Positions 12,101 to 56,541 are shown, numbered from the stretch's first letter. The stretch: DNA of 64,000 nucleotides from Trichoplax adhaerens (GCF_000150275.1 NW_002060947.1:5180267-5244266), one strand, 5' to 3'. Notes: generated from the letters alone by a model not told the origin. Program-made: numbers and translations.

Positions 12101-14560
12101 TGCATGTATTAATGTCAAAATGCAACACGAAATTCTTAATATAATGATGTTATATATATGCAATCATTCTTTTTTGTTCAAGCTTAAAACGATATCATAT
12201 TTATTATACGATAAAGAATACTTTTCACATTCAGTTGATAAAATCTTTCCTATCTTTTAATTTGTATATTTTTTATCTAAGGAAGATATATTCAGCATTG
12301 AATATTGCAGTTTTAGGAGATTTGTTCAAGCGTAATTATACACTATATCCGCTTATGTTATGTATTTTTCGTGTGATTAACATGTAGCGTGTATCCTTTG
12401 GTATATAATGGCGGCTACCATCCTAAGTAATGCCTTACGGCGTAGCTTAGTACTTCTACTGATTGGAATTTGGTTTCCATCAGGTTAGTTAGCAGTCGTT
12501 ACTACATATACAAAGCCTATAGATTATTCGCGAATTATAGATTTCGATATATTATTTAACGTATGTTGGCAATTTAATATTGGTTTTGCTGCAGCACTAG
12601 TTTATTTCTAAAAATTTATGCAACGAATATAACTTAATATACTGTTGCGAAACAACTAAATTCAATATATGCATATCAATGCATTCTCGTGATTTTTATT
12701 TGTACTGTATTTTAATCCATAGTTTAATATTTAATTATTTTTGATTTTAATAATTCTTGGCTTCAGTGCAAATTAATTGCGGATATGAAAAGATTTTAAA
12801 AGTCAGTTCTAATGATAATTTTTATCACATAGTAATAAGGGATGAGTATCGCTGCAAACTATAAGGCCAGCAATTATTGATGATTAAACTATAGCGTAAT
12901 TTACTTTGCTTATTAAAATCATTAACTGAAGAGCCATTGTGATATATACCAATCACGAAATTCCAAATTTTAGAAAAATAAGGGCTTTAATGAATCTTAT
13001 ACAAAGATTAACTACACACAGCTCTACTCTAGCCGAATACTACTACTAAAGACTTCTACAGCGAACTAACAGAATAATCTAAAGTTGCATGCTTTTATAC
13101 TTTTCGTAGCATTCGCAGCTACAATCCGCATGGCAACCTTTTACCTTATTTTACACATAGTTAAATTATTCTTATTAAGTAACACTATTCTACTGCGGAC
13201 CATCATTAATCCAATATGGATACGACTACAGTACTTACGTAGATATTATTCACACCAGTCAAAGTACAATGAATTAACCATATCCTAATATATGATTTAC
13301 AGTTCTATTTTTACCTATAGCCTTATTAGTAACTCAACACCTTACTGTATATAGTCATCTGTACTCTAGCATAGGGTCTATATCACTACAGTCTATAGTT
13401 ATAGCTACCAAATATCTCTTAGGATAAATTTCTACCGTACATTATACTAAACATGGCTAACAGTCTATAATCACAATACTAGTTACATTACAGTCATCCA
13501 ATGAGTTCATACAGTGCTAACTGAAATTAAAATTTGGTTATTTTGTATTATCGTATTACTCAGATCTTCGAGTTGACAATTTAATATTTAAGTAATAATA
13601 TCGTCGCCATTTACAGAACTTTATGATCGATATAACTACAAGGAAATGTATTTGAGATAGTATAGATTTTAAATTAACTTCTACGTGTAGTAATCATCAA
13701 TGACACAAAAGATATTTCGTTCCACATGAAATATACATTACTTTGTAAACTACTCTTCATCACAGCTACCAACTCCAGCGATGCTAATTAACTGCCTATC
13801 TTAAGCTAGGCTGCTTATATCGTAAAATTTTAACAAAATATGAAACACCTTTTCATAGTGTTATTTCGAAAATAATTCTCTCGATATAACATTATTGAAA
13901 TGGTTAGTAATGGGATGATGAATCTTTCGATAGTGATAAATTAAAAATGCGCTTAATATGTACAAATTAGCAATCAATGTCGTAAATATGAGACAATGCC
14001 TTGAATACTGTTGCCATTTCGATTAATTAATTATTAATGCAACATATAATTAGAAACTAACAAATGATAATGATACATCAAATCATTTTACTTTTGATTT
14101 ACAATGACTAATTCAAAAAATACAATAAAGATTGATTCTAATTTTAGATTGAGTTTGCATAATTCGTTAGTAAATTCTGTTCTAGAAACTTATCTTTCCT
14201 AAAGAATTCGTAAGTACAAACATGATTATTTTCATAAGTATTAAGTTTAATATTGTATGAATTAATTGAGCTAAAATTATCGTAAAGTTCTGAAGACGTA
14301 TCTTTAGATATTGCATGCAGTAAATTACTCCATAAATTACGATGAAAATTCTTCAGAATGTCTTTCATGGTGACACTTAATAGTGAAGAATATGATCAAA
14401 TATTAATAATAATGTTTCTAAATTGCACGAAGTTCTGTATTAGTAACAGAAATGATATCATATTTTGTTACGAAAGATCACATTATTATTGAAACAAGAA
14501 ATGATATCTTAATTAGTAAGCATTCACAAAGTAACATTTGAATTGACTCATTAATTTTGG
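9110..14560 (-). pseudogene. Decayed intronless (probably processed) copy of an LGR-type LRR ectodomain
   Basis: Minus-strand fragments in order: ISVTNTELRAI, SYSSLLSVTMK, RNLWSNLLHAISKDT, FLEQNLLTN, HLLVSNY, RNGNSIQGI (14560-13930); EYIFLR*KIYKL, SLSYNK, NLSYNRF, EINLSK, FARFNVISEI, NIRKNKIL (12340-11460); ENLETLMLS, INMSKNKF, VDMSKYKI (10500-9110). The first block is collinear with the first LRRs of the plus-strand LGR but has no introns. Confidence 0.5.
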
Positions 14561-15168: not shown

Positions 15169-15635
15169 AGTCTTGAAAACAGTATTGCTACAAGATAGCG
15201 TAATTTACGAAGCATAAATCGACTCACTGAATTTCATATCGTGGAATAATATCTGCGTTATCGGAAATAATTTTCTTCTACTAATAGATATATCATGAAT
15301 TAGACGCCTCGTATTATGCATTAAACAATAATTTTAAGAAATCCTTTTATCATTGGAGCGCGGTATATCGTATTCATATACTCCTCTGCAGTACTTCTTG
15401 AGTCCTAGTTAGAACTATTAGCTTTAAAATCTTTCAATGAATAGAAGTTGATCGTACCTACCGCTACTTTAGGAAAGTGACAGTATTTACAGACATAGAC
15501 ATCTAATGACAAATATAAGATAATCAGATTACATTGCATTCATACATGGAATATTTTTGAATTAATCTGCAATTTACCATAACTTAGTTACAATCACAGT
15601 TATTCGAACTGTAAAGTAGATATCACTTCGTGACA
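15169..15635 (-). mobile_element. Older, diverged member of the A/B solo-LTR group
   Basis: Contains the shared blocks TTAGACGCCTCGTATT, ACAGTATTTAC..ACATAGACATCTAATGAC and TTACAATCACAGT.ATTCGAAC. Ends in CGTGACA; no clean TSD. Confidence 0.6.
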
Positions 15636-16336: not shown

Positions 16337-19300
16337 CCTCAGCTTTGTGGTGCATAGATGTTAAATATTGCAAGTGCGACCAGAAAAATACAACAATAAT
16401 GTGTTCAAATTTCGAAATGAAAGAGATTCCAACTGGAAATGCTATAGTTACCACCGTTGGTGATCTGTAAGTAATATATAGAAAGGAACTTAAATTTATT
16501 ATAATATTATGTGGAATTAGAAACAGACACGCATATTTAAAGTTATAGAATTGCATCGACAATTATTGATAGATCTACGATTATGATGTCATATGCCCAC
16601 GCCTATTTTAGAAATTAAGCAATAAAGATATATTTAATCTAGATTTAGAAGTTTGGTAACAGGCTGCATTATACAACCAGTAATGAGAAATATCGATTGA
16701 AAGATAATCATACTGAAATAGTTACTATACCATAGACATTTTTGAAAATATCCCTTACGTTTATGCGTTACTGCAGCATGAACATTATAGTTAATTATTT
16801 CACCAGGCTAGTGTAACGTAATTGGAAATCTACAGATACCTCATAACTCTAAGCTCTTAGCCAAAAGTAGAATTGAAATAGTCACGGCAATAAATGATCG
16901 GTAACTGTCACTATCATCGATAGATGCCGTTTTTAGTATTAATGTAAATATTAAATACTATTCGATTTTTAACGATACCACACTTATCTAGGATATTGGT
17001 AAATAATTCTAAATTTTAAATGATATTAAAATCAATTAAAGAAACATTATATTACTATCATTTCAATTTTAAAAAATTTGGGATAAGAATTTCTGAGAAA
17101 TACGATATTTCCAATTTAAGCAATTTATAGAGAATGCTTTAAATTATCACTAACCTTGCACTTCAATCAGGTCAATAACCGAAACTGGAATCAAAATTAT
17201 CAGAAATTACAGCTTTATTCAATATCCGAACCTTTCAAAAGTGTAAGCTAATGTCTCACATCTTTCATTGTCTGATTTTGAAAATTATACACAGATTGTC
17301 ACAAACCAGCTTGGTGACGAGGATAACGTAAAATAAATATCTAAATCTCTAAAAATCTGCGGATTCAGTACCCCTACTCACAAGAATTTAGACGCCTTTG
17401 ATTCTACGTTAAACTCAACTAGACAATTGAGAACTACTTTATTAAACTATCTGATGGGTTTATATACCCTTCTACTGTAGCTAACATTCATGAGTCATCT
17501 TATAAAAATACTAAGGTGAGAACATCTACTAACTAAGAGTCATCTTATAAAAATACTTAAGTGAGAACATCTACTAACTAATTTTTCACAGTCGGAAATA
17601 CAATATGTCCTTTCTCAGAATCATTTCAGTGCACATTACAGTACAACATTACATTTACTGTAACAAATTTATAATTAGAATAATTCCTATTGTAAGTAAC
17701 TAATTGTGATATATTATCACTATATTATATTCACCAAATTTAGATAGCTATTTCTTCACGGTAGTTCGTACCTGACACTGATACAAAACAACCTGAACCG
17801 CGTATGAGGGAGCAGTATCTACTCTTTCAGGAACACTTTTCCTATACTAGTAGACTACAAAAAGACTTAGACGCCTCGTATCTTACGTTAAAGATTAAGC
17901 ATAAGAACTAACTTTATTACACGATTTTTTGCATTTATATACTCTTTTGCAATGGCAAAGATATCCTAGTTAGTAATATTAACGTTGAAACTTGATAATG
18001 AATTAAAAACTAATTTTATCTACTGCTACCTAATGAAGATAACAGTATTTGTGAACATAGACATCGAATGACTAATACAAAATTGTAAGATTATAATATG
18101 TCCTATCACGTAACATTTCTACAATAATCTAAAATCTACCATAAGTAAATTACAATCACAGTGATTTGAATTATAAGAAGATTATTCTCGATTCCCTAAT
18201 TAAACTACTAATTTCAGTAATGTCTGTATATATCACTATAAAAGCTAGTGCTATATTTAAATATCACACATCTAAATTAGAAACTCTCCATATAAGGGTA
18301 AATCAACAAAATTATCCTAGCATAAATGTTTCTACTATAATTTCGATATCATAGTGCATAACACTGTAACATACGCCTATCCTGTCAAATAAAATCAGCT
18401 AAGATACGTTTAGTATTCCTTTTTAAGCTAAAAATACGATGAGTTTCTTTTCCGAACATTTTATTAGTAAACTTATGAAAATTAAGTGACATATATCCTA
18501 TAGCTTGTTGTTATGGTGTTGCGTAGTCATTAGGATAGTTTAATAAGTACAGTAGTAGCTAGTATGGAGAATATCCATATTTGTAGTGCTAGGTAAGATA
18601 AGTAATGCCTTAACGTGGATGTTGTTTGTAATAGTTCATTACATATTTGATATTGATTGTTATTGTGTGATAGATAGCAGTAAGATGATTCAAGTTCTAG
18701 TTAATGATAGTTGTATTAGACAACCTTCGAGCTTAGATTAAGATTAAGTATGAGCAAGAGATTCAAAATATTTACTGATAGAAAAGCTATGTAAGGAACA
18801 TCTCAGTTCGAGACGTTTCTCCTAGTAAGGTATAATACCAACACTGTTGTTGTTTACAAATTAGACGGTTCCTATATGAACGGGAACATTTGAGTTCAGT
18901 GGTGGTAAAAAGTTGTAGATGTATCTTTGCTAATAATAGTTTCATCTTTACAGTGTTTTGCTGTGTGTCTTTAACGTTAAGTAAAAGGGCATTTAAGCCA
19001 GTAGCTACTTATAGACTTTTACTGTACGTTACCTTGTCGCAGAAGTGAAATTGTGACACTTGTGTACCGAATATGTAATTCTTTCATGTCTTACTATTAA
19101 GACATAATAACTAGTTTTAACAAAGCGTGTAGATCTGTCTATAGACAGATCTACACGCTTACATTAAATTTATTTCATTAGAAAATATTAGAAGTAACTA
19201 GAGAGTTACTGAACGCAAAACTAAACCACAGCTGATATATTACCAACAAGTAACAAGATTAAATCTAATCTATGAATTTACGATCTTTCTAGCTCTCTTT

Positions 19301-22300
19301 GGCTTAGCTTATATAGCCTTTGATATTGTCCAATTTAGCCAGTAATATTCAAGTGTACATATATATTTTAAGACAATTACACTATGTAAAGAACCATATA
19401 TAAATCTTGATAATTAAGACTAACGATAGTCGTTACATGAACGATAAATACCTAAACAAGAACTTAATACTCAATATCGATTATCTATCTTTGACTTATT
19501 CTTTAGGACAATGTCAAGCAATAAAATCAGTTTTATTGAAGATGATGCTTTTAAAGGATTGAAAAATTTGCGAGTTTTGTACGGCAGAAGAAAAAATTAC
19601 CTAATCTTATTTCTATTATAATGGATGTAAAACTAATCTTATTTTCAGTCACGCAAGAAATGTTATTAATTTCAGTTTAATTCATAATTTTCGCATTAGT
19701 ATCTTATAATTGCAAAGATTAATTTTTCCATTACTAATTGAGTAGATATCAATTAGATTTTAGTTAATTCGAAGTTATCGTAACACAAATTTGGCCATAT
19801 TTTCCGAATATACTGACTTTGTTTTGAAAAATATTTCATCAAAACTGAATAGAGATCTAAGCCAAAATCGGATAACGTCCCTTTCAGCCAATGTATTTGA
19901 AGGTTTAATGTTCCTGAGCTCAATGTATGAAATTTATGATGCATTTTCATAGATGCTTGTGATAACATATTTAGTACAGTACATAACATTGTAATCGCCT
20001 GTGATTATTATGAGGCTCATCTTTAATGGTTTCTAATTTCAATTTAGGTCCTTGAGATTTAACAGACTGAAACGTGTTGATGCTGTTGTTTGGAAACATT
20101 TAAGCGGTCTCATTAATTTGTAAGCGCACATATAAAGCCATGGATTAATATAAATAATAAAATAGTCTTAATATATCACCTAGAATACCATTTTATTTTG
20201 AAAAAAGATATTTAGATACTGTCGGAACAGCGTATTCATTTATTTGTAGATTTTAAATGAAACACGTAAAAATACCAATTGATTTTTTAGACGAATATCA
20301 GGCAATCAGTTTACTTCGGCTGAAGATATAGGCCTCGCTGGATTAATTAATTTACGTATATTGTAAGTAATGTTTTAGCTTCAACGTTATATTGTAGAAA
20401 GCATAGAGAGGTATAAGTGTGAACCTATAGAATTATATTTTATGACTATGAAAATTTGCATTTATTACCATCTAACTTAACACTTAATTGGCAGTACATT
20501 TTACTTATCGTAGGCTTATTTTTAATAGAATTTTAGTTTTTATAACGTAAGAATATCTATAAAATTATCTTTTGTAAATTGATACCGAATTGGAATAACA
20601 ATCTAAGTTTTACTGTAAATGTAATCCCTTGGAATGTTAATTTAGATTCCTGCAGTTCAATCGCCTGAAATCCTTCAACTGTTCAGACTTTTCAGATGCA
20701 CGCTTCTTACAGAATTTGTGAGTGGTTTGCAGATTTATAATGGCATCAAACTTCGAATTTCTATGAAATTACAAATATTAAAAAATTTTTGGCGGTTTAT
20801 TTGATGTGACCTTTTGTAGGCATTTGTCAGCAAATTTTATACAAGAAATTAACCCTGAAAATATGAATTGCCAAATTCCACTGAGCACATTGTAGGTTAA
20901 AGCTTTTACAGCAATCAAAATTGCTACAGAGAACAATACTAGATTTTTACTATAGATCCATAAATCCTTATTAAAATGAGACGAATTTTTAGTTTGGGTT
21001 GATTTATACAGTTATAAATTAACATTCTAACAAAGACAGTATGCTATTTTGCATTCCTTCCTGAAATTGCCTAGGGTAACTATCAATAGCTAAAAGTTGA
21101 TTTAGATAGGCGAATTGGCTATGTTATAAAATCCATCTCGAAATTTCAAAATTTGCAGAAAATTAGAACTTTATCAGATCATTATCCAAAGATAACCTAC
21201 TCATAACGCTTCTCTAGGGGAACATTGCTACTAGAAAGACTTCTTGAAAAACTCATCGAATATTTTAAACTTATCTGCTTGCTTGCTTTCTGTAGTGCTT
21301 ACGGGCACAATCTCCATGTTAATATCCTACCGTATTTTTAAATTGTTTGTATTTAAATATATGCGTATAAAACGGTCCGTTTATACGTAAAGTCATTAAA
21401 AGGGTATTCCAAGTATCATAAGCAGGATATTATAACTAATTACTAGCTTAACGATAAATGCAGGGAGCTATGCTACCATACATCATACCATACATGGCTA
21501 ATAATAATATAAAATCCAATTCTAAGTTATGTTAGAGGCTGTTAAAAGAACTACATTTTAGTATTACTGCACATGGCATTTAATAAAATTTCAATTGAAA
21601 GGTAGTAAGTATTCTCTTTACTCTTGAGGCAATATAAATGTATCTGATGTAGATAAAAATTATTATATATAGCTACAACCTTAATGATAGTTAATCATTT
21701 ATTTATACCTAGCCTATGCTTATTTCGATAATAACTATAGAGAGTTGGATGGCAACAGAATTCGTTATTTAAGAAATGGAACATTTGCTTCTTTATCTTC
21801 CTTGAAGATACTGTGCGTTAAGATCTAGTTTAGATGAAAGCAAACATAAAGCTTTCATATGTGTTAATTACGTTAGGGATTGATATGAATTAGGATAATG
21901 ACTTTTTCATCGCTAAATGTATAGAAATTTGGCTTTTAATTCTATTTACTCAATGGAAGTGGCTGCTTTTAGTGATGGTCATAAATTAAGAAATCTGTAT
22001 GTATCTTTACGTTATTAAATTTTCCTTTATGTAAATGATTTCGAAAGAATTCAAGATGCTTTTAATTGTACTAAATCTCTCATTATCTAATTGCTCAAAA
22101 TAGATATATGAGTAACAATAAATTAAAAATACTGGATGGAAGGTTTTTTAAGAGACTTCCCCGTTTGCGAATATTGTAAGTATACTAGATGTAAATTATT
22201 GATCTTAGAATCATAAACTTAATTCTAATAATATATATTCTTCCGCTATAATTAATGGATAGCTATGCAAGAAATAATCAAATTCACAGCATCATAAATG

Positions 22301-25300
22301 ATGGATTTAAAGAAAATTCAAGAATGGGAACCATGTTAGTTTTTGCCTTAGATTATAGCATTCTCTTTCAGATTGTAGCTGATGCTGTTTTCGAATGGGT
22401 GTAAAATTTTATTTTAAGAATTAGAAATTTGATAATAGAAGTAGAAAATAAACTTTTCACGTTGCATCTTTTCTCAGAATCTTGACTTCAAACAATTTAA
22501 AGGAAGTGGCAAAAGATGATTTTGCTAATTTGAAAAGTCTGATTGATCTGTAAGCTAGATTTACAAATGGGTTGAATAGATAATCGATTTTAGATCGATT
22601 ATTATTATCACCGCTTCATAATAGTAGTTATACATATTTTATTTAGAAATTTATCCGAAAATAATATTAGTAAGATCGACTACAGAGCTTTTGAAGGATT
22701 ATCAAATTTAAAAAGATTGTAAGTATTAATCGCAGTGCAACCGTTATTGCTCACTTACATATCTCAAAAAAATTAATTGCGCAGTTTTTATTTTGTTCAT
22801 TCTTTTGTAAAAAGAAGTACGTTGTTGAATATGAAAGTGCACAAGTCATTATACGTATTACTAACTATTAAGTTGCTATCATTTTTCCGGTAATAAGATA
22901 CTTTTTACGACTTTGCATGGTCGTTATTAGAATTTCATTAATTGAAATTTATTAAACATAGATTGAGATTATATTATTAAGGAAAATGACGTTTTTCAAA
23001 TATGATGTCTTAAAGACACCCTAAATTGTAAATTTATCTAGATAGAATTAAAGGAATGAGATTATAAAGTTATAAAAGCTTATCAGTATCCTCTTAGCTT
23101 TCTATCTGCTATTACCTCAATGAACGCCTTAATCTCGAAGAAATAAACCTCACATCAACTGCTATAGTAATATACCGTATTATAGACATCCCTGAAATAT
23201 AATTAATTACTGTAGTACTATTTTTGATTACCGATATTTACGCCCATACTGAAAATGAGCTTTATAAAGAACGACATTTATGCTTACATTCTATCATTTA
23301 TGAGCTAGATAATATGAAATTTAATAAATGTTATGCTTAATAATACTGATCTTTATTGTCAGATTCTATAAAAAATACAAGCGTATATATTGAAAAGTGA
23401 AACTTATAAAAATTCTAATCGCAATTTTAATTCCTCAACTATACTTAGGCGCCTAAATGGGAATCCTATTGGCAATCTATCCATGGAGAATTTGAAAGAC
23501 CTATCTTCGCTTGAAAATCTGTAAGTAAAAACTTTAATATTTATTTTAGTTTTTAATGGATGGATGAATTTTTCACTTATCTATGATTCTAGAGAGTTAA
23601 AAAATATCCCCAATTTGGTTATTCACCTGAAACCTTTTAGTGCCCCACCATCTGGACCTCTCAAATTGTAAATAATAATATACCATTTTTTCAGCTCTTT
23701 AAATTATAGATGCGGTCTATGGAGACATATATATCTATATTAACTATTTTATAAATTTTATTTTGTCTATGGCAACAATTTTTATAGCTATTTAACAGAT
23801 TCTATAATAAACTTTATTGATGAAATGGCTTTTGCAAATTTCTCAGCTATGGAATATTTGTAAGTAAACATGTTTAACTATAATTCGAAAAATATGAAAA
23901 ATATATGAAGTTAATAGTCACATTAGTAAGGTTTTGTGGTTATCTAAAGTTTTCATATAATACAAATTGATTTTCATGTCTCTATGTTTCTAATAACAAA
24001 GCCACTACCATAGCCCGCTGTGATAAAGTGAACCAAAATAAATCAAGAGCTACAGTTTCTAGTACATTTCAATTTATTACATAGGTTCGGTTCGTCTAAT
24101 CTCTACAATAGACACCAATTTTAGAAAATTACGGCTGAATTAAAAATAATCCATATCATTCATTCTTAGCGTCATTTCTTTAGCTATTAACATTATGAAG
24201 CGCTATTATAAATGATTTTTTAGCTCCATTTTTCTCCCAATGTCAGACATCTAGCCAATTAAATTAAATATATAACTGATTGTCTCAAAACAGCTTTGTA
24301 ACCAGATAACGTAATGTACGATAATTAGTCAATTCCTTGAACCACGTATCAAGGAACGATATCTGCACTATCAGGAATACTTTTGCTCTACTAGCAGACT
24401 ATATAAAGATTTAGATGCCTCGTATTTTACGTTAAACAATAAGTTTAAGAATTAACTCTATTACACAATATATCGTGTTTATATACTTTTCCTCAATAGT
24501 TCTTTGGAATCATTCTCTGAATTAGACATTAATTTTAGCTACTACTCCCTAATTCAGACAACAGTATTTACCAACATAGACATCTAATGACTCATACAGA
24601 ATAGTCAGATTACGATACGTCCTATCGCGGAACATTTCCACGATAATTTACAATCTACTATAAGTAAATTACAATCACAATGATTCGAACCGTAAGTAGA
24701 TAATTCGCATTCCCTAATATAGCTATTAATTTCAGTATATGTATAACATATATCTGTCACATATAGCCAGTGCTGTATTAAAAACTCAGTATATCCAAAT
24801 TAGAAGTTAACTAAATAAGGATAGGCTAACAAAATTATCTTAACATAGACATTTGTACTCTAATACAGTATATAACACTGTCACACTGATTAACTAGAAT
24901 TATTCTTTGATATTAGGAATATGGGGTCTACCGGATTAAGATATTTTCCCAATACCTTACTATCGACTAACCAGGAAAGCGCCTTGAAAGAACTGTAATG
25001 CGATGTTATTTATTGAATTACGCAAGAATAAACATATTTATTGTCCATCTCGAAAAAATTCTAGAATTACAAGAGCATGTTAGCCATATATTCTTAAAAG
25101 CTGATTACAGTCGCATAATCTACTACAATAAACTAGTTGCAGTGTATTTACGGTCTTAATTCTACAGTCTGAGTAATAAATACAGCGAGTTCATGAGTTT
25201 GTTCTTGATTATTTTAGCTATTTATACCAAAATCTCATCGAATCGCTTCAAAGTAACTCATTTCATGGATTAACCAAGCTTCAAAAGTTGTAAGTCTTAT

Positions 25301-28300
25301 GGTATTGCATTCAAATAATCATGACCATTTACGGTATTCGTGGACAATCGAATAATGATATCAAATCAAGACCTAAAGATAACTCTTCAGCCATTTTTAT
25401 TTAGGTATTTAGATGATAATTTTCTTACAAGAATTTGTAATTCTTCCTTTGATACATTAACCGCTTTGGATACGTTGTAAGTTTCGAGTCTTCGAGTTTG
25501 AAAATTTTAATTTGTATAAAGATCAACCCAATATTAGAAATTTGAAATTTATTAAGCTAATTTCAAAACTATAATCTTTATGGCTAATTTTTTCAGAATG
25601 ATAAGAAATAATAATATGACACATTTGTCTGAATATCAGTTTTCTGGAATGCCAAATGTTTTTAGAATGTAAGCAAATATGTTCAATTCTGGGAAATATT
25701 TTAATTCTAATAAATTTTCAATCTGAAGAATCATTACCATATATCATGGTAAGAGCGAAATAGACATGTTTATGTATATTGATATACTCCGAAAATAGAT
25801 CATTATCATCCAACCAACTTTGTTGTATACATCCCAATACTTTTGCAAATTTAACACGCTTGACCAGCCTGTAAGTTATAAATGATAATTTACGTCATTA
25901 CTCCAGGATAAACATATTTTAATTCAGTTGATAGCAATTTAAGTCTCAAAAATCATAAAAATACATTATTGAAGGCCTGTTAATAATTCGGCCTATATTA
26001 CAATTAAGAACGATTTAATTTATCAATTTTCGCGATATACTCACAGTGAAATTTTATTCTGTCAGAGATCTGTCGGACAATGTTATTAGCGATATACAGG
26101 GTTTTCAAATACCAGATCTTAAGGCTTTAACATTATTGTAAGGACCGTATTGAGACTTTTATCTAAACCGTATTGATTAAGATAACTAAATAAATGCAAT
26201 ATTTTATTTAGGATGCTAAATGAGAATCAAATATCAAAAGTCTTGAATGGTTCCTTCTCGGGCTTGAAAAGTTTAAAGAAGTTGTAAGTACAGCATTCTT
26301 GTCAGATAATTTTGTAAATATTTATTCGTCAATTAGCCCACAGATTCTGATTGGTCACAACCTATCGATTACTGACTAATGTTGGTATAATTTTAACTAT
26401 CGAAAGGCAATCACCATTCCTTGGATAATTTCATTATCACCTTTTGTACCATATTAATAATCATTCATAGTAATACAATACATGCATCAATTAGTTTATC
26501 ATGGGTATAGTATACAAGAAATGCCATTGATATATTAGCTGCTAAGGCTTGATCTTAATAATTTTTTTGCTTTCAGCATCAGCTTATGAAAATCTATTAA
26601 TGTCTTAGGTAGTTGTAGGTTTGATACCAATCAATTACACATAACACCAAGACAGTACTTGCATTACTCATATTACGAACATTAAATCTAAACGGACAAA
26701 GCGATAGTATTCTATATGCATTTTTGTATAAAGAAAGCGATATATATATATATATATGTTATATATATATACTTAAATTTTCCGTATGTCAATTTGCTTT
26801 TTTTTCCAAAAAGTAACCTGTAAAGCTTGACCGTATAGAGATAAATGCATGTTAAAAGTATTACGCTGATTATACTCTAAATTATTGATTTCAGCAAAGT
26901 TTTATTAGAATTTAATAAAGATTACAAATTTTAAGTTATACTACGTGCTTACTTATTTTGTTAGGGTTTTACGAACTAACAGAATATCTTATATTGCACA
27001 TGCAGCCTTTGAAGGACTAATTCAAATACAAGACATGTATGTAAAGACATTATATGGCTATTAGTAGCAATTTCGCTTATATGTTAACTTTTGTATATGT
27101 AACGGAAATAATCTTTAATAATTCTTAGACGCTTGGACGGAAACTGGATTGTCTCTGTTGCAATAGATATATTTAGTACCGGAGCGCCGCTAATAAATTA
27201 TGTGTTGGTTGCATTAAATACCCACGAATTATAAATAGACGATTATAAAATTTATTTTTGATACAGATTTATTGACGTAGTTCAAGTATATCACTAGTAA
27301 TCTAAAGCACTAGTATCATAGTATGTAAAAATTCATTGTCAATTAAGAACTGAAAGTAAACAGTAAAAATATCTGTAAAATAATATTCAATCTCTTTATT
27401 TCAAAGCAAAAATTTTCTAATCCATTTCTTATCATAGCATGCTTGACTAAATCATCTGAATTATTTTACTTTTAGAGGTCTATCAAAAAATAAAATTAAG
27501 TCTGTCCAGTTAATTAATACTAGCTTCAGCTTAATTCAGCATTTGTAAGTTATAATTTGCTAAAGTTCTGGCGCTATTTTAATTTTGGATTTGTCTCTCA
27601 TAAATTTTAGCTACCGTATTGTATTTCTATACTATTGCAAAAGTGTGTTTTGAAATAAGTAAATTTTTTTCTTTAAAACTGGTTATAAAAATAGAGACCT
27701 ATCTCATAACGTTATCCGTAAATCTATTATACTATCCGGCAATAATCTTCAAAAGCTGTAAGTATTAAATATTCTCCTGGTAATTAGTTAAGAAGTTGTT
27801 AATTATGTTGAGAATTTTAGTTAAATATGGCGGTCTTTGGTCATTTTTCTTCTGTTAATTGCAAAAATTGTATATATATTTAAAATTCTAGAAATCTTTC
27901 TGCAAATCGCATTGATCATGTCTCCGAATTGAAGAATCTTAATCTGTCGTTATTTGATAGCATGTGCGTATCAAATCTGCCGATCATAAAATATGTTATA
28001 TATGTTAACTGATATCATAGTGAATTCCCAGCATGATTTCGCGTTCTACTGTATATTTAAAATAACGAGCTGCATCAGTAAAAAATAATAGTCACGGCAA
28101 TTTCGTAAATTTTGTTGCCGAGCATTCATGATGCTCATCAATGGCCAAATGTAAAAATCCCCTTGATATTATTTATTAAATTTTGGAATGCAGTTACAAT
28201 ACTACAATAAAACCTTAAATAAGATTGTTGACAGTCTAAGATTGATAGCAACCAAGTCTAACTCTCCTAACAAGTTCTACCACACTAACAAGAATGCCTT

Positions 28301-31300
28301 AACGAATTTTTATCATTTTTTAAGTTAATAATATTTATACATTATATATGTATAATTTTACTATAAAATTCGCCATTAAAATTTATGAATCACAGAGACT
28401 TCAGCAACAATCGAATTTTAGACATTAATAATCAAATTATCCCAAATACTCAAGAATTTCCTAAAATAAGAGCATTGTAAGTTGACTATGAAATTATTAC
28501 TTTAAATGGTTAGTACATAATGCTAAATTTCCTTTTTAAATATATTCAAAATATTTAAAATCTCTCATATATCATAGGTATATTAAAAGCAATAAACTAA
28601 ATCAAATTCATCAACGGGCATTCCAGAACCTACAGAATTTGGAGATTTTGTAAGTAATCAAATACGAGATGCTAACAGTTATATTATCAGTGCAAAAAAT
28701 TTCGTCTCCTTCAGTTGGATTTGATATGGTAATCATGTATTCTATCGGTAACTCTGTTTTCTGTTCCTTCAGAGACCTGCAAAATAACAACATCAGAGTT
28801 TTATCTTTTGCAGAGAATCTACGCAGTCTTGAGAAGCTGTGAGTTACCATTAATAGACTAATTAGATTATAGGCTTATTTATAAACATAAGGAAAATTGG
28901 TCATTATCAAATAAAATAAAACCACTTAATTGTTGGGTTCACTTTTAGTATTATGGGCAAGAATAAGATTCAGCAGCTAAAATCACAATATTTTCAAAAT
29001 CTAACAAATCTTACCGAACTGTAAGGAAAGCAATGACTGCAATTTATTTTATGTACATTATGCAATCTCCATTATTTAGCATGCGACTGGTAGATTTAAT
29101 AATGTCGCCCAGATTTTGTAGAAGGGATTCAGTAACCACTATAATTTCTACATGTAATCTGCCAATATAGGGATGTAAGCTGCAATCAAATCAGACGATT
29201 AGAAAATCACATGTTTAAATCCTTAACAAAATTAAAATCGCTGTACGTACTACTTTCTGCCATAAAGCTGATTATTGCGACCAAAATATTTATAAATGGC
29301 TTTCTGAATTCTGTTGATGAAAACGAAATTCTAATTCCTATTCTTTGTTCTTGTATATAAATATTTTCATAGCAAATTATCTGGTAATCGTATAGAATTA
29401 ATTAAAACTCAAGCTTTTAATGGTTTGATTGCTCTAACTAATTTGTAAGTAAAGTTTTAACAATATTAACATTTTCAGCATTTTGTAAACTGTATGAATT
29501 ATATTATTGATGCGAGGGTGCTTTGAGTAATTTAGTCTCAGTTTAGTCTAAGTGTAAAAATTGGACTACTTTTTTAATTTAAATCTAGGCAACTGGAATA
29601 TAATTTAATCCAATCAATTGATGGTATATTCAAGAATCATCTTCAGAATTTACAGACATTGTAAGTTGGATGATGAAATCTAATTTGATCTGATTTTGTA
29701 TATACCACTAAATAGTTGGTAGTAGTCCATTATCAGCTAGACTTTTACATGTGGAAATCTTAGAACAGATTAGTAGCTGACTTTAATCGACTTTGGCAAG
29801 TAATTTTTACAGTAAACTTGAATTAATACCGGCAATAGCAATATGAATGCGAGTTAATATAGTATTTAAATATCGAATATGGGCGTTTGTTTTCATAGTA
29901 GCTCTAGAGAAGAATGTTATTTGTTTGTATTATAACAATAGCGAAGTAAAATATTACAGTCTTCGTTTAATTATTTAAAGAAGTTTAAACTGTATGCAGT
30001 CTCAAATAACTGCTGACATGCAACTATGGATAGCTTCAAGCCAACAATTTATGTACCTTAGAGGGCTAAAGAGCCAGATTTCTGAAGTAATTTTCTTCAT
30101 ATTACAATGAATTTTAGGAACATATCTAATAATAAAATTACATCGATTGGAGGCTCCTCTTTCCTCTCCATGTCTTACTTAGAACAGCTGTAAGTCTTAA
30201 TAAAGTATTGACTACCTAAATATTTCATTTTATTTGAAATATGCAAAATAATTGATGGAATAGCGCTTTTATTGAAAGCTAACTTATTCAGCAAATTTGC
30301 TGACTTCAATATGCCCTATTCTATGTTAAAATAAATTAATTATCAAATAATTTGCAAGTCCATTTTTTGTATGAATATATATCTGCAATGGCGAATATAT
30401 GCAAATCTTTTTAAATAATATTTAAAAAGTGTATTCTTTCACGTGATTTATCGTTAACTAACCGTTGTTACTTTTCAATTTCTAGCTGGCTTGATAATAA
30501 TCAAATACCATCATTGCCAACTAATAGTTTCAACGGATTATCAAGTTTGATAATTATGTAATTTACATAATATGAATATTACGTAGCAATATTGGTGTAA
30601 AAACGTTACAGAATATTAACGATTGATTAATGTATTCGATATTTATTGATGTCTAGATCCTTAAGTGAAAACTTAATTGGAAACCTTTCTTGCGAAAGCT
30701 TTACCAACCTAAATCAACTTGATGAACTGTAATTATTAATAGTGATAATTAGCTATCTACTAATATTTAAAGACGTTTAAATCGTTGAAAAATAATTTGA
30801 CACTTAAAGCAGGAAATGCAATTTACATTAATTTGTTATCATATTAAATATTATCCAACCATTTTTTTCTATTAGACGATTGGCATCAAATAATATATCG
30901 TTTATTCACCATAACTGCGCGTCAGTTTTCTCACGGTTAAATAAAATGTATGTCGAGTAATAACTTTCTGTAAAGGAGTTTCCAATAGCACTTCGTCTTG
31001 CATAAATTCAACTGTCTGACAAGCAGCCTACTCTTAAGCAGTATTTAGTTTTAAAAACCATCAGTAAATTTATCTTATTTCATGATTCTATAGTGATTTC
31101 AATTTTAACAACTTAGTCCGAAATGGCATCAATATCAGCAATTCTATTCTCGATAGCTTGAGTGGATTCCCGTTCGAGCTGTAAGTTACAATTGTGCTAA
31201 AAATCACTTATCGTAGACTAAATATCGATATTGGAGATACGTTTACGCAATCTAATCTTGACACTAACTATATTCATTTCTAGGAAATTGGCTGGAAATA

Positions 31301-34300
31301 ACATCAAGCATTTACAGACAAGCTACTTTCGACAAAATATCTTACTTAGATCAATGTAGGTCCAAATGGAATATTTTATTAACCGATAGAAAATAATCTA
31401 TGTGTTATGCCCAAAATTGAATTTTTAAACGTAAATATAATATAAATTTTAAGTCCTAATACTACATTTGCTAATTTTCGATTTTAGAGATATTGGCTAC
31501 AATGAACTAAATGATGAAGAAATGGCCGGATTAATTTCGTCTATAATAATTCTGAATGAGGAGTGCCAGTCATTTAAGAAAATTTTTCGTTGCTACGAGT
31601 ATTCAATGTTAGTGCTTTAATAAGTTGTCTCCATATAGCCCGGTCAGAAGAATTTTGATTGTCTTACCGGTATTTAAAAGTTAATTACTATTGATAATCT
31701 TATCGTCATTAGAAATGTGGCCGGTAACAATATGCACTCCATTCCGCCTGGATTTTTCAACTATTTAAAGGAATTTATTCTAAAAATGTAACTGTTAATT
31801 TTAGATGCTAATAGTCAAAGCTTAAATTTTCGCTATTGCGATAATTTACTTTAAATTAAGTAAAGAGAATCAGAGCTAGATTTTATCGTAGCATAGAATT
31901 ATGACGAATGCATTCTTAATTAGAAACGATCTTCATACTGCTCTTACAGCAACATTACTAACAACAAATTACAAACGGTGGATGCATCAGAAATCTTTTC
32001 TTCTCATGACTATATTCTTCAAGAATTGTATGTTCTTTTTATCGTTAGATATCATTTTCTATATACTTACTAATTCATATCATTATGGTACACACACTCA
32101 TTACTTAAGATATTACATTTCATTGAACAGAAGTTTATTCGAAAAGATATAAAATTAATGATTCAAATCTTTAATTCAGGTATATATCGAATAACCGAAT
32201 TCAATATTTTACCAATTTCAAGAAATTACAGTTTTACAAACTCAGAATTCTGTAAGTGACCTAAAGTTTATCTAAAGCTTTAGCTAATATTTCGACTTGA
32301 ACTATCATCAAGCCCCTTCATCCTTTTCATGAAGATATCTAAAGTTATATTCTTCATTAAATAATATCAAATGTACATAAAATCTCTTTAGAAATATTGA
32401 CAACAACAATATCGCAGATATTTGCCAGAAAAATTTGGGTCGAACATGGCCTAACCTCGAATATTTGTATGTTTATAAAAATTAATAGCCTAACAATTAT
32501 TGCTATAATATAATTCATATCAGCATGATCTAAATAAGATTATGTAGTCAAATACATGTGGTCGATCATTAAATACCATGCCATTCTATTATGCAGGTCT
32601 GCAAATAAAAATAATATCAAAGTATTACAGAGTCGTTGCTTTCAATATTCATCTAAACTAAAATTTATGTAAGTCTTTAAGATTACTAACAGAAATTTTT
32701 AATGTTAAATGCAATAAAGAGGATTCAGTAAAGAAAGGAGTAAACTTTATTCTAATGATAAAATTCTACAGATCGCTGAAAGAAAATCCAATCAATTCTC
32801 TCAACCCTCGATCATTTTATGGACCCCCTATATTAGATACAGTGTAAGCTACATTCAAATCAACAAATAAAAGATATATGTATTTTACTGACAGTGTTGG
32901 CAGAATTTTCTAAATTTTTAAAATAATTATTTCCTTATATTGATATAACGTACGGATTGTTATATAATAACTAACTCTTATAGACTGTACAAACTATATT
33001 CTAATCAACATATTAAAATTAATTGTACTTTACTGATAGTATTGCTAAATTTCCCAAATTTAAAAATATAATTATTCAGTTCCATTGATAAAATATTAGG
33101 ATTGTTATCTAATTTTTAATTCTTACATTGAAACTGTGTAACTATACTCAAATCAACAAGTTATAAGAAAACACATTTTAAAAATAGTATTACTAAATGT
33201 TTGAAAATGTTTAAATAACTATTTGTTTATGATAACAAAATATATTGAATACTATATAATAACTAACTTCTGTCTTGATTTTTTACGATCAGATTGTCAA
33301 CGCGAGATTATTTATGTTGTTATGTACCTGCTCAAGTCACATTTTGTACACCCATTTATGATCAGGACGCATTGTCTACGTGCGATGATATGCTATCTCA
33401 TCCAACGCTGCAATATTTTGTATGGATAATAGGAATTACAGCATTTGTCGGAAATATTTTAGTATTTCTCCATTATTGCCAACAAAGTAAACAAAAGCAT
33501 CCACCCATATCAGTTACTACTGTTTTGCTAACTAACCTGGCATTAGCTGATTTCTTTATGTCAATCTACCTGATTATTATTGGTATTGCGGATCAAATCT
33601 ATCGTGGATACTATTCCATGTATGTAGAACCATGGTTAACGAGTGTGCCTTGCTATTCCGCATCATTCCTGGTATCATTATCAAGTTTAATGTCGGTATA
33701 TATGATGATCATTATTAGCATTGATCGCTTTATATGTATTACTTTCCCATTTTCAACAAAAAGATTAAAAGTTTCCAGTGCAAGAAATGTGCTGTTGGTC
33801 GGTTGGTTATTCTGTATTGTTTTTGCTGGCATACCAGTAGTCTTCAGCATAGGCAAACCAGGAGAGAGCCGCCTCTACAAGTATAGCAGTATATGCATGC
33901 CTAGTAATGTCAATAACGTTTACTATAGAACTTGGATATTGTGCTATACTTTCTTGACCATGGTAGCCTGGATACTAACATGCGCTTTATATTTTGGCAT
34001 GTTTTTCTCTATGCGTCAATCTAGCAAATCAGTTCGTAAAATCGGATCTGTAAATCGCGACAGAAAAATTGCCATACGGTTATTTTTAATCATTATTACT
34101 GATTTAGCCTCTTGGATGCCTTATTATATCTTAGTTATTCAAGTTCTTTTTACTGGTACAATTGACATCATCGTCTTACAGTTTGTCATCATTTTTGCAT
34201 TACCAATAAATTCTGCTATTAATCCTTACTTATATACGATTACAAACCTATCTACATTTAATAAAGCTTTTAGTCAAGTTGTACCTAGTGGCGTCCACCA

Positions 34301-34622
34301 GGCAATAACTAATATAAGAAGTACAGAATTAACACGACAAGGTAGCGAAATATCTCGTCGCCAACGCGAATTTAATCTGTCACATGCTACAAGAAGCGAT
34401 AGTGTAACACCGAGAAAGAGTATCAGCGTAATACTACTAGATGAGAAACAATCGTCTAATTTAATCGTAGATCAAACACCAGTAGGACAAGGCATATTTA
34501 AAGAAGTCGAATTTGGATATTCCGATACGCTTACTAATATTAGCGGTCAAACTGTTAAGCATGGATTGCATCATATTACCCCTAGGCGCAATGATCCATC
34601 TTCTATTACTAACATTCATTAA
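16337..34622 (+). CDS. Giant leucine-rich-repeat-containing GPCR (LGR): LRRNT + 47 LRRs + short Cys hinge + class A 7TM
   Basis: LRRNT exon 16337-16466 (WCIDVKYCKCDQKNTTIMCSN...EIP). Then 47 AG/GT-bounded phase 2-2 exons, each one xLxxNxIxxIxxxxFxxLxxLxxL repeat, starting near 17171, 19507, 20048, 20291, 20646, 20820, 21741, 21925, 22104, 22263, 22478, 22647, 23449, 23593, 23788, 24917, 25218, 25405, 25597, 25799, 26066, 26212, 26965, 27129, 27476, 27695, 27892, 28395, 28578, 28773, 28949, 29171, 29373, 29589, 30118, 30486, 30657, 30876, 31094, 31284, 31488, 31713, 31950, 32180, 32392, 32597 and 32772. Terminal exon 33293-34622. The start codon is uncertain. Confidence 0.9.
17297..17777 (-). 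mobile_element. Solo-LTR-like element, family B (copy 2), intronic, with an internal tandem duplication of about 45 bp
   Basis: TGTCACAAACCAGC...CCTGACA; flanks CAGAT/CTGAT; aligns with 8668-9102. The block GAGTCATCTTATAAAAATACT..GTGAGAACATCTACTAACTA occurs twice (about 17492-17581). Confidence 0.85.
17783..18371 (-). mobile_element. Diverged family A solo-LTR-like copy, intronic
   Basis: Collinear with 24281-24885 over most of its length and ends in ATAACACTGTAACA. The left end is obscured by the adjacent family B insertion. Confidence 0.7.
18509..19058 (+). mobile_element. Solo-LTR-like element, family C (copy 2), intronic
   Basis: TGTTATGG...TTGTGACA flanked by a perfect TSD, CTTGT (18504-18508 and 19059-19063). 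The 3' terminus (CGTTACCTTGTCGCAGAAG...TTGTGACA) resembles those of families A and B. Confidence 0.8.
19123..19160. repeat. Perfect 38-bp palindrome
   Basis: AAGCGTGTAGATCTGTCTATAGACAGATCTACACGCTT equals its own reverse complement. Confidence 0.95.
24281..24885 (-). mobile_element. Solo-LTR-like element, family A (copy 2), intronic
   Basis: TGTCTCAAAA...CACTGTCACA flanked by a perfect TSD, CTGAT (24276-24280 and 24886-24890). It is the reverse complement of copies 1 and 3. Confidence 0.88.
26740..26771. repeat. Interrupted (AT)n microsatellite
   Basis: ATATATATATATATATATGTTATATATATATA within an LGR intron. Confidence 0.85.
33293..34622 (+). CDS. Terminal exon of the LGR: hinge, 7TM domain and cytoplasmic tail
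   Basis: YLCCYVP..FCTP...LSTCDDML hinge; FVGN (TM1); NLALADFFMSIYL (TM2); W..S..C; SIDRF; SSICMP; TDLASWMP; LPINSAINPYLY (NPxxY). These are typical LGR 7TM motifs. Confidence 0.95.
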
Positions 34623-56507: not shown

Positions 56508-56541
56508 ATTGCGCAAAAGTGAGCAAACTAAGGAAGATGAA

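What the first reader, a model, noticed from the sequence alone, without database searches (positions are those of the whole stretch)
16337..34622. Giant LGR with 47 symmetric single-LRR exons: a possible combinatorial splicing receptor
Seen: each LRR is its own exon. All begin and end in phase 2 and have lengths divisible by 3 (mostly 72 nt, range 63-120), so any subset can be skipped, duplicated or lost without a frameshift. Known: glycoprotein-hormone receptors and RXFP1/2 have about 10 LRRs and LGR4-6 about 17; one-repeat phase-2 exons are typical of LGR genes, but 47 is about twice the repeat number of a TLR ectodomain. Inference: an ectodomain of more than 1100 aa that must form a superhelix or segmented solenoid, with potential for many isoforms in sensing or immune recognition.
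Basis: partly seen in the sequence, partly recalled or inferred. Interest (0 to 1): 0.8.

Follow-up and report, generated by a model that had tools for sequence, protein, structure and literature searches.

The report
Trichoplax LRR-GPCR gene with 48 repeats
This is a real gene of the placozoan Trichoplax adhaerens for a hormone-receptor-type GPCR with 48 leucine-rich repeats, one per small exon; it is one of dozens of such oversized receptors described in 2022, and nothing shows that its exons are mixed and matched.

Summary
On the + strand, 16337-34622 carries an LRRNT exon, 48 single-LRR exons and one hinge+7TM exon. I count 48 LRR exons, not 47: 36 are 72 nt, the range is 63-120 nt, and all are phase 2/2 with GT-AG introns.

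The genome is Trichoplax adhaerens Triad1 and the gene is TRIADDRAFT_56630. Its public 934-aa model starts inside exon 21 and skips nine exons. The Trichoplax sp. H2 model RDD40138.1 joins exons 19-50 exactly as in my table.

Between H1 and H2 the LRR exons differ by 11 synonymous and 1 non-synonymous change, with no indels. They are therefore translated and under constraint.

The architecture is a family trait. The genome holds at least 74 related 7TM exons, and ten paralogues show 19-37 such exons within 20 kb upstream. Hauser et al. 2022 already described 41 placozoan-specific LGRs with unusually many LRRs. Earlier notes of this scan, on other DNA of this genome, report genes with 44-60 repeats.

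Combinatorial splicing has no support:
- Symmetric exons are generic to LGR genes.
- Splice sites are canonical and introns short.
- The repeats are old and each is different.
- I could reach no transcript data.

Best reading: an orphan, constitutively spliced LGR-type receptor of about 1,690 aa. Low novelty.

The parts
12408..12483 (+). Candidate first exon (start codon plus signal peptide); inferred, not shown
   Evidence: ATG, basic n-region, hydrophobic core and a phase-1 GT donor that fits the phase-1 acceptor of exon 1. A paralogue has a similar short signal exon 1.1 kb upstream of its LRRNT exon.
16337..16466 (+). Exon 1: Cys-rich LRRNT cap (phase-1 acceptor, phase-2 donor)
   Evidence: Open frame with a C..C.C...C...IP pattern. 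LRRNT-like exons precede the arrays of two paralogues.
17171..17242 (+). LRR exon 2, 72 nt
   Evidence: Phase 2/2, AG/GT; 13.4 bits with the paralogue-trained HMM
19507..19578 (+). LRR exon 3, 72 nt
   Evidence: 33.3 bits; identical in H2
19853..19924 (+). LRR exon 4, 72 nt
   Evidence: 24.5 bits
20048..20119 (+). LRR exon 5, 72 nt
   Evidence: 10.7 bits; lies under the H2 96-aa LRR_8 model
20291..20362 (+). LRR exon 6, 72 nt
   Evidence: 9.1 bits
20646..20717 (+). LRR exon 7, 72 nt
   Evidence: 12.6 bits
20820..20891 (+). LRR exon 8, 72 nt
   Evidence: 12.8 bits
21741..21812 (+). LRR exon 9, 72 nt
   Evidence: 28.1 bits
21925..21996 (+). LRR exon 10, 72 nt
   Evidence: 12.0 bits
22104..22175 (+). 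LRR exon 11, 72 nt
   Evidence: 22.0 bits
22263..22334 (+). LRR exon 12, 72 nt
   Evidence: 15.1 bits
22478..22549 (+). LRR exon 13, 72 nt
   Evidence: 19.6 bits; 1 synonymous H1/H2 change
22647..22718 (+). LRR exon 14, 72 nt
   Evidence: 32.2 bits; 2 synonymous H1/H2 changes
23449..23520 (+). LRR exon 15, 72 nt
   Evidence: 17.5 bits
23593..23667 (+). Irregular LRR exon 16, 75 nt
   Evidence: Phase 2/2, AG/GT. Only 1.4 bits, but its single H1/H2 change is synonymous in this frame.
23788..23859 (+). LRR exon 17, 72 nt
   Evidence: 14.7 bits
24917..24994 (+). Irregular LRR exon 18, 78 nt
   Evidence: Only 0.8 bits, but all 3 H1/H2 changes are synonymous in this frame.
25218..25289 (+). LRR exon 19, 72 nt (first exon of the H2 model)
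   Evidence: 28.9 bits; residues 1-23 of P0260
25405..25476 (+). LRR exon 20, 72 nt
   Evidence: in P0260
25597..25668 (+). LRR exon 21, 72 nt (the JGI model starts at an internal Met here)
   Evidence: in P0260; partly in P0121
25799..25870 (+). LRR exon 22, 72 nt
   Evidence: In P0260; skipped by P0121
26066..26137 (+). LRR exon 23, 72 nt
   Evidence: In P0260; skipped by P0121; 1 synonymous change
26212..26283 (+). LRR exon 24, 72 nt
   Evidence: In P0260 and P0121
26965..27036 (+). LRR exon 25, 72 nt
   Evidence: In P0260 and P0121
27129..27203 (+). LRR exon 26, 75 nt
   Evidence: In P0260; skipped by P0121
27476..27544 (+). LRR exon 27, 69 nt
   Evidence: In P0260 and P0121
27695..27757 (+). 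LRR exon 28, 63 nt
   Evidence: In P0260 and P0121
27892..27963 (+). LRR exon 29, 72 nt
   Evidence: In P0260; skipped by P0121
28396..28476 (+). LRR exon 30, 81 nt
   Evidence: In P0260 and P0121
28578..28649 (+). LRR exon 31, 72 nt
   Evidence: In P0260 and P0121
28773..28838 (+). LRR exon 32, 66 nt
   Evidence: In P0260 and P0121
28949..29020 (+). LRR exon 33, 72 nt
   Evidence: In P0260 and P0121
29171..29242 (+). LRR exon 34, 72 nt
   Evidence: In P0260 and P0121
29373..29444 (+). LRR exon 35, 72 nt
   Evidence: In P0260 and P0121
29589..29660 (+). LRR exon 36, 72 nt
   Evidence: In P0260 and P0121
30118..30189 (+). LRR exon 37, 72 nt
   Evidence: In P0260 and P0121
30486..30557 (+). LRR exon 38, 72 nt
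   Evidence: In P0260; skipped by P0121
30657..30728 (+). LRR exon 39, 72 nt
   Evidence: In P0260; skipped by P0121
30876..30947 (+). LRR exon 40, 72 nt
   Evidence: In P0260 and P0121
31094..31180 (+). Irregular LRR exon 41, 87 nt
   Evidence: In P0260 and P0121; 2.1 bits
31284..31355 (+). LRR exon 42, 72 nt
   Evidence: In P0260 and P0121
31488..31607 (+). LRR exon 43, 120 nt, with an inserted loop holding two Cys
   Evidence: In P0260 and P0121; 0.8 bits
31713..31787 (+). LRR exon 44, 75 nt
   Evidence: In P0260; skipped by P0121
31950..32027 (+). LRR exon 45, 78 nt
   Evidence: In P0260; skipped by P0121
32180..32251 (+). LRR exon 46, 72 nt
   Evidence: In P0260 and P0121
32392..32466 (+). 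LRR exon 47, 75 nt
   Evidence: In P0260; skipped by P0121
32597..32668 (+). LRR exon 48, 72 nt
   Evidence: In P0260 and P0121
32772..32843 (+). LRR exon 49, 72 nt (last repeat)
   Evidence: In P0260 and P0121. An orthologous 72-nt phase-2 exon exists in another placozoan-like contig, L014:114-185.
33293..34622 (+). Terminal exon: short Cys hinge, 7TM domain, about 110-aa tail, TAA stop
   Evidence: Pfam 7tm_1 E 3e-25. Best solved relatives are LHCGR 7e-36, RXFP1 3e-33, FSHR and TSHR. DRF and NPxxY motifs are present. PolyA signals lie 200-290 nt downstream.
17297..18341 (.). Interspersed-repeat copies that inflate intron 2
   Evidence: Copies at 8668-9102, 6412-6961, 15250-15614, 24338-24864 and 36274-36822
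24258..24887 (.). Interspersed-repeat copy that inflates intron 17
   Evidence: 83-85% identical to 6389-7020 and 36251-36906

Best explanation
One protein-coding gene of Trichoplax adhaerens (TRIADDRAFT_56630, under-annotated in public records) encodes an orphan LGR-type class-A GPCR of about 1,690 aa. Its parts, in order, are a probable signal peptide, an LRRNT cap, one uninterrupted run of 48 'typical' 24-residue LRRs, a short Cys hinge, a rhodopsin-type 7TM domain and a cytoplasmic tail.

Shown:
- the exon chain;
- LGR homology of the 7TM domain;
- purifying selection on the repeats;
- membership of a large placozoan-specific paralogue family with the same one-repeat-per-exon layout.

Inferred:
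- The repeats are spliced constitutively into one long solenoid.
- An unknown ligand binds the concave face of that solenoid.
- The signal passes through the hinge to the 7TM domain and a G protein, as in glycoprotein-hormone and relaxin receptors. The hinge keeps the C...C-D-D-M-L segment that aligns with the FNPCEDIMGY region of LHCGR.
- The symmetric phase-2 exons are a relic of growth by serial exon duplication, not a splicing device.
For: Exon chain:
- 49 of 49 introns are GT-AG.
- All LRR exons are phase 2/2 and a multiple of 3 nt.
- Every junction codon is L, I, V, F or M.

Independent gene models:
- H2 protein P0260 (RDD40138.1) joins exons 19-50 with exactly these boundaries.
- JGI protein P0121 uses 20 of them whole, plus part of exon 21, with the same boundaries.

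Constraint:
- H1 and H2 differ in LRR exons 3-49 at 12 sites: 11 synonymous, 1 non-synonymous, no indels. This includes 7 synonymous and 0 non-synonymous changes in exons 13-18, which lie outside both long models.
- Exon divergence is 0.38% against 0.65% in introns.
- Exon 49 and the terminal exon are conserved at 77% in another placozoan-like contig, while the intron between them does not align.

LGR identity:
- 7tm_1 domain.
- Best solved homologues are LHCGR, RXFP1, FSHR and TSHR, and the hinge segment aligns.

Family context:
- 74 related 7TM matches in the genome.
- Ten paralogues have 19-37 phase-2 LRR exons of mostly 72 nt within 20 kb upstream.
- Hauser et al. 2022 (PMC9545775) describe 46 T. 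adhaerens LGRs, 41 of them placozoan-specific with unusually many LRRs, for example 34 in Tadh-LGR15.

Repeat age:
- Repeats average 26% identity to each other (maximum 50%), with no periodicity and no DNA-level similarity between exons.
Against: - I could reach no transcript or cDNA evidence for this gene. Joining of exons 1-18 to exons 19-50 therefore rests on frame, phase, selection and the absence of a terminal or initial exon between them.
- The start codon exon is only a candidate, 3.85 kb upstream.
- The H2 annotation splits the upstream exons into separate 96-aa and 160-aa models. However, that contig begins inside intron 2, so the gene is truncated there.
- The ligand, the G-protein coupling and the cell type are unknown.
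Confidence: 0.85

Rival explanations
1. Combinatorial-splicing receptor. Because every LRR exon is symmetric, cells would skip different subsets and make many receptor isoforms with different ectodomains.
For: - All 48 LRR exons are phase 2/2 and a multiple of 3 nt, and each equals one structural repeat. Any subset could therefore be removed without a frameshift or a broken repeat.
- The JGI model P0121 drops nine exons and still reads through.
- Canonical TLRs are absent from placozoans (PMC6321704), which leaves room for other LRR sensors.
Against: - Symmetry is inherited. All ten paralogues examined have the same layout, and it is the general LGR gene plan (established knowledge, not tested here).
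- P0121 is a gene prediction, not a transcript. The H2 model includes every exon from 19 to 49.
- Splice sites are canonical: 20 of 49 donors are GTAAGT, all introns are GT-AG, and the median intron is 140 nt.
- There are no clusters of near-identical alternative exons.
- Each repeat is individually under purifying selection.
- No isoform-like proteins were found.
Confidence: 0.06
2. Two genes: exons 1-18 would encode a secreted LRR protein, and exons 19-50 a separate LGR with 31 repeats.
For: - The H2 model P0260 starts at exon 19 and is flagged partial, and H2 has separate small models over exons 5-8 and about 10-16.
- Exons 16-18 are irregular repeats.
- Intron 17 is 1,057 nt long.
Against: - Exon 19 has no start codon or signal peptide, and exon 18 ends in a phase-2 GT donor, not a stop.
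- The 18/19 junction codon is Leu, as at the other junctions.
- Intron 18 is only 223 nt, and intron 17 is long because it holds an interspersed repeat.
- The H2 contig starts inside intron 2, so fragmented models are expected there.
- The upstream exons are under the same purifying selection, in the same frame.
Confidence: 0.06
3. Decaying or non-functional member of a large gene family: a pseudogene whose open exons persist by chance.
For: - No transcript evidence was found.
- The first exon is uncertain.
- The family is large, and some 7TM copies elsewhere in the genome carry stops.
Against: - All 50 exons are open, with intact splice sites and intact DRF and NPxxY motifs.
- 15 of 18 exonic H1/H2 differences are synonymous and there are no indels.
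- An orthologue is kept at about 78% identity in another placozoan lineage.
Confidence: 0.03

Closest known systems
Placozoan-specific LGR expansion (Tadh-LGR6-46 of Hauser, Koch and Grimmelikhuijzen 2022, PMC9545775; named 'GRL101-like' by NCBI)
   Same: - Same genome.
- 7TM exon 42-53% identical to at least 40 paralogues.
- Own short Cys hinge and no LDLa module.
- Dozens of LRRs, each on a phase-2 exon of about 72 nt.
   Different: - 48 repeats, against the 34 quoted for Tadh-LGR15. This places it at the upper end of the family, but earlier notes of this scan report 44-60 repeats in other genes.
- Its public models (934 aa and 1209 aa partial) under-report it.
- I could not map it to a Tadh-LGR number, because only TriadITZ identifiers are given.
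Glycoprotein-hormone receptors (LHCGR, FSHR, TSHR; type-A LGRs)
   Same: - Best solved sequence relatives of the 7TM exon, at E 7e-36 to 3e-31.
- The hinge segment just before TM1 aligns with the FNPCEDIMGY region.
- The 7TM domain lies on one exon, and there is one LRR per phase-2 exon.
   Different: - About 9-11 LRRs against 48.
- Type A has a long hinge with two Cys boxes. Here only about 40 residues separate the last LRR from TM1.
- No known cystine-knot ligand has been assigned.
Relaxin-family and GRL101 receptors (RXFP1/2; type-C LGRs)
   Same: RXFP1 is the second-best solved relative (3e-33). The short hinge carries a CC...C motif, and databases name the family 'GRL101-like'.
   Different: - No LDLa module was found in the window (regex scan; the Pfam families on record for P0121 and P0260 do not include Ldl_recept_a).
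- 48 LRRs against about 10.
- The very long non-placozoan homologues (2,000-3,300 aa) are CUB, LDLa and MAM mosaics with few LRRs.
Chaoptin and artichoke (insect LRR-only surface proteins with about 40 repeats)
   Same: After P0121 itself and its H2 orthologue P0260, they are the best hits for the LRR part (about 25-30% identity). They show that uninterrupted runs of 40 or more typical LRRs exist in other proteins.
   Different: They are not GPCRs. The resemblance is at the level of the repeat consensus only.

Membership tests
LGR (leucine-rich-repeat-containing class-A GPCR) | Rhodopsin-type 7TM domain most similar to the LHCGR, FSHR, TSHR and RXFP receptors | tested here: met
   Pfam 7tm_1 E 3e-25. 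The top PDB hits are LHCGR, RXFP1, FSHR and TSHR at E 7e-36 to 3e-31.
LGR (leucine-rich-repeat-containing class-A GPCR) | N-terminal ectodomain of LRRs capped by a Cys-rich LRRNT | tested here: met
   Exon 1 cap plus 48 LRR exons. The consensus is LxLxxNxIxxIxxxxFxxLxxL, with Asn in 34 of 36 regular repeats.
LGR (leucine-rich-repeat-containing class-A GPCR) | Cys-containing hinge between the last LRR and TM1 | tested here: met
   Four Cys lie in the first 31 residues of the terminal exon, and this segment aligns with the LHCGR hinge end.
LGR (leucine-rich-repeat-containing class-A GPCR) | Gene layout with one LRR per exon and phase-2 introns | tested here: met
   48 of 48 LRR exons.
Type-A LGR (glycoprotein-hormone receptor) | About 9-11 LRRs and a long hinge with two Cys boxes | tested here: not met
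   48 LRRs. Only about 40 residues separate the last LRR from TM1.
Type-B LGR (LGR4-6 / bursicon receptor) | 16-18 LRRs with a type-B hinge; orthology to LGR4-6 | tested here: not met
   48 LRRs. Hauser et al. 2022 find no type-B LGR in T. adhaerens. I built no tree of my own.
Type-C LGR (RXFP / GRL101) | N-terminal LDLa module or modules | tested here: not met
   No LDLa-like Cys pattern in any frame of the window. The Pfam families on record for P0121 and P0260 list no Ldl_recept_a. Caveat: the true 5' exon is not established.
Placozoan-specific LGR expansion (Hauser et al. 2022) | Closest relatives are other Trichoplax LGRs, with its own hinge and an unusually high LRR number | tested here: met
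   The top named hits are all Trichoplax 'GRL101-like' proteins at 42-53% identity, against 36% or less for non-placozoan hits. Paralogues carry 19-37 or more LRR exons.
Combinatorially spliced recognition receptor (Dscam-like logic) | Arrays of alternative exons documented in transcripts | not testable with these tools
   No RNA data were reachable. There are no near-identical alternative exon clusters.

The most novel reading that the evidence does not exclude
In an animal without canonical Toll-like receptors, the many placozoan LGRs with 20-60 single-LRR exons serve as a diversified recognition repertoire for microbes, food or self. Regulated skipping of symmetric LRR exons in genes such as this one adds a further layer of isoform diversity.
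Probability: 0.05. Interest if true: 0.8.

Novelty: already known. Interest (0 to 1): 0.2.

Why it matters
The practical value is a corrected gene model. The public protein for TRIADDRAFT_56630 (934 aa, 20 complete repeats) misses 28 of the 48 LRR exons, and nine of those are dropped internally. The H2 model misses the first 18 exons.

Anyone counting repeats, building trees or expressing placozoan LGRs from public models would therefore work with truncated or chimeric ectodomains.

Biologically, the gene is one more example of the striking but already published placozoan LGR radiation, whose ligands and roles remain unknown.

Tried and rejected
The LRR-exon HMM and per-exon tblastn give only chance-level hits there: at most 8.8 bits, and E above 0.05. 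The only shared DNA is interspersed repeats.
- **Missing exons in the long introns.** None were found. Two of the long introns, 2 and 17, hold interspersed-repeat copies.
- **Recent exon duplication.** There are no blastn matches between exons, and repeat identity shows no periodicity.
- **Transcript evidence.**
  - No Logan or ENA protein near 100% identity turned up at 243-773 aa or 514-1634 aa.
  - The 90% clusters of P0121 and P0260 have one member each.
  - A full-length product of about 1,690 aa falls just outside the length ranges that could be searched.
- **A third word search with paralogue P0128.** It aimed to reach longer proteins but returned only three close relatives.
- **The look-up of encoding contigs on P0121.** It found nothing.
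- **Pseudokinase tail, as noted for other LGRs of this genome.** There is a TAA stop, polyA signals follow, and no open frame of 70 aa or more lies on the + strand downstream.
- **Joined model.** Joined evidence comes only from the public proteins P0121 and P0260.


Full report
**What the DNA is**

The window is AT-rich (27-37% G+C). A search of its own assembly places it at contig C1410:5180267-5244266 of a 105.6-Mb, 1414-contig genome. Protein matches identify this as Trichoplax adhaerens Triad1. The terminal exon is 100% identical to residues 493-934 of P0121. P0121 is TRIADDRAFT_56630, also filed as XP_002112520.1 and B3RYP5, and sits on a scaffold of 8,573,113 nt. The contig is not human.

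**Checking the observation**

I enumerated AG...GT-flanked open segments that start and end in phase 2 and chained them. The result on the + strand is:
- Exon 1 at 16337-16466, a Cys-rich LRRNT cap. Its acceptor is phase 1, so at least one upstream exon must exist.
- 48 LRR exons from 17171 to 32843.
- A terminal exon at 33293-34622.

Of the LRR exons, 36 are 72 nt. The others are 63, 66, 69, 75 (x4), 78 (x2), 81, 87 and 120 nt. All 49 introns are GT-AG, 20 donors are GTAAGT, and the median intron is 140 nt.

The codon split by each intron encodes Leu 33 times, Ile 10, Val 3, Phe 2 and Met 1. This is the first hydrophobic position of the repeat. Each exon therefore equals exactly one structural repeat, with consensus L-x-L-x-x-N-x-I-x-x-I/L-x-x-x-x-F-x-x-L-x-x-L-x-x and Asn in 34 of 36 regular repeats.

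An HMM built from these exons scores at least 15 bits only within the array. It reaches at most 8.8 bits anywhere else in the 64 kb on either strand.

A second HMM, trained only on exons of paralogues, scores 44 of the 48 exons at 6 bits or more. It finds no additional exon in the introns.

The four low-scoring exons (16, 18, 41, 43) are irregular repeats. Exons 41 and 43 are present in both public protein models. Exons 16 and 18 carry only synonymous H1/H2 differences in the proposed frame.

From exon 1 to the stop the coding length is about 1,663 codons, so with a signal exon the protein would be about 1,690 aa.

**Independent support for the exon chain**

The JGI model P0121 (934 aa) begins at an internal Met in exon 21. 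It uses 20 of my LRR exons with identical boundaries but skips exons 22, 23, 26, 29, 38, 39, 44, 45 and 47.

The Trichoplax sp. H2 protein P0260 (RDD40138.1, 1209 aa, flagged partial) contains exons 19 through 50 without a gap, again with my boundaries.

The H2 contig NOWV01000111.1 is collinear with the window at 99.4% identity, but it begins at window position 18681, inside intron 2. This explains why H2's annotation breaks the upstream exons into small models of 96 and 160 aa.

Between H1 and H2, exons differ at 0.38% of sites and introns at 0.65% (Fisher p = 0.04). In LRR exons 3-49 there are 12 substitutions: 11 synonymous, 1 non-synonymous, and no indels. Seven of the synonymous changes fall in exons 13-18, which neither long model includes.

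If roughly a quarter of random changes are synonymous, 11 or more out of 12 has a probability of about 2e-6 (my arithmetic). The repeats, including the upstream ones, are thus translated in this frame and under purifying selection. Exon number does not differ between the two lineages.

A more distant relative is also informative. It comes from unnamed ENA and Logan contigs and is 77-79% identical. It keeps the terminal-exon acceptor and a 72-nt phase-2 orthologue of exon 49, while the intron between them does not align.

**One gene or two**

Nothing between exon 18 and exon 19 looks like a gene boundary:
- Exon 18 ends in a phase-2 donor.
- Intron 18 is 223 nt.
- The junction codon is Leu.
- Exon 19 has no Met or signal peptide.

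Two of the long introns, 2 and 17, are long because they hold interspersed repeats that also occur at 6.4, 8.7, 15.2 and 36.3 kb.

Downstream, the frame ends in TAA, polyA signals follow at +200 to +290 nt, and there is no long + strand frame.

Upstream, the best candidate first exon is 12408-12483. It has a Met, a basic n-region, a hydrophobic core and a phase-1 donor. A paralogue has a similar short signal exon 1.1 kb upstream of its LRRNT exon. This part is inferred.

**What it is**

The terminal exon carries a 7tm_1 domain. Its best solved relatives are LHCGR (7e-36), RXFP1 (3e-33), FSHR and TSHR.

The DRY-type motif reads DRF, and NPxxY is intact.

Only about 40 residues separate the last LRR from TM1. 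They contain four Cys, and the stretch just before TM1 aligns with the hinge-end segment of LHCGR.

I found no LDLa module. The gene is therefore an LGR by every defining feature tested, but it is not type A, B or C.

**Context**

The genome holds at least 74 matches to this 7TM exon, most at 40-53% identity. For ten paralogues I fetched 20 kb upstream. Each shows 19-37 phase-2 LRR exons of about 72 nt, against 0-2 on the reverse strand. The same detector finds 40 of this gene's 48 exons. In two paralogues an LRRNT-like exon marks the start of an array of about 34-37 detected exons.

Hauser, Koch and Grimmelikhuijzen (2022, PMC9545775) report 46 T. adhaerens LGRs. Of these, 41 are placozoan-specific, with their own hinge and 'an unusually high number' of LRRs, for example 34 in Tadh-LGR15.

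Earlier follow-ups of this scan, on other DNA of this genome, describe sister genes with 44, 49, 49, 56 and 60 repeats. Those notes are unchecked, but they agree with my survey.

The very long non-placozoan homologues (2,000-3,300 aa) are CUB, LDLa, MAM and lectin mosaics with few LRRs. The LRR-only giant ectodomain is therefore a placozoan speciality, but not peculiar to this gene.

**Combinatorial splicing**

Symmetric exons are necessary for that idea, but they are the inherited LGR layout and are shared by all paralogues examined. Several observations argue against a dedicated mechanism:
- The splice sites are canonical and the introns short.
- The repeats are old and individually distinct, with mean identity 26%, a maximum of 50%, no periodicity and no DNA-level matches.
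- There are no clusters of alternative near-identical exons.
- Each repeat is constrained.
- The only exon-skipped product on record is a 2008 gene prediction. The H2 model keeps all exons from 19 to 49.

I found no transcript-derived proteins for this gene. A full-length product would fall just outside the searchable length range, so expression and isoforms remain untested here. Occasional in-frame skipping is plausible, but a regulated combinatorial system is unsupported.

All joined evidence comes from the public proteins P0121 and P0260. P0260 exceeds the folding length limit.

**Verdict**

This is a real but ordinary member of a published family. The useful product is the corrected 50-exon structure.

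Noticed in passing
window 3-794 (- strand): An open frame of 264 aa that runs off the window start carries a rhodopsin-type 7tm_1 domain (E 4e-22). It is a second GPCR gene, with no LRR exons detected next to it in the window.
   Followed up: partly
window 6389-7020, 8668-9102, 15147-15622, 17297-18341, 24258-24887, 36251-36906: At least two families of interspersed repeats (68-85% identical copies, both orientations) lie in and around the LGR gene. They account for its two longest introns.
   Followed up: partly
Neither the LRR-exon HMM nor per-exon tblastn finds more than chance-level similarity there.
   Followed up: partly
window 57018-58951 (+ strand): Several exons match the PolyA_pol head and RNA-binding domains. 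This is probably a tRNA CCA-adding nucleotidyltransferase gene.
   Followed up: partly
window 54996-55313 (- strand): An open frame matches the C-terminal end of Dpy19 (E 8e-12), a C-mannosyltransferase-like protein.
   Followed up: no
window 59964-63823 (- strand): Exons with WD40 / beta-propeller matches, probably one WD-repeat gene.
   Followed up: no
window about 38400-44800 (- strand): The H2 annotation places a PDZ+PH domain gene here (product at least 684 aa), tail to tail with the LGR gene.
   Followed up: no
window 51527-51837 and 56414-56709: Low-complexity stretches that read as repeated TVQYS-like units in several frames on both strands. They look like a simple or satellite-like repeat present twice.
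   Followed up: no
P0127 vs P0128 (paralogue on scaffold of 9,739,543 nt): The H1 model TRIADDRAFT_53796 (952 aa) and its 99%-identical H2 counterpart (1270 aa, partial) differ by more than 300 aa. Under-calling of LRR exons in the 2008 models therefore seems systematic for this family.
   Followed up: partly
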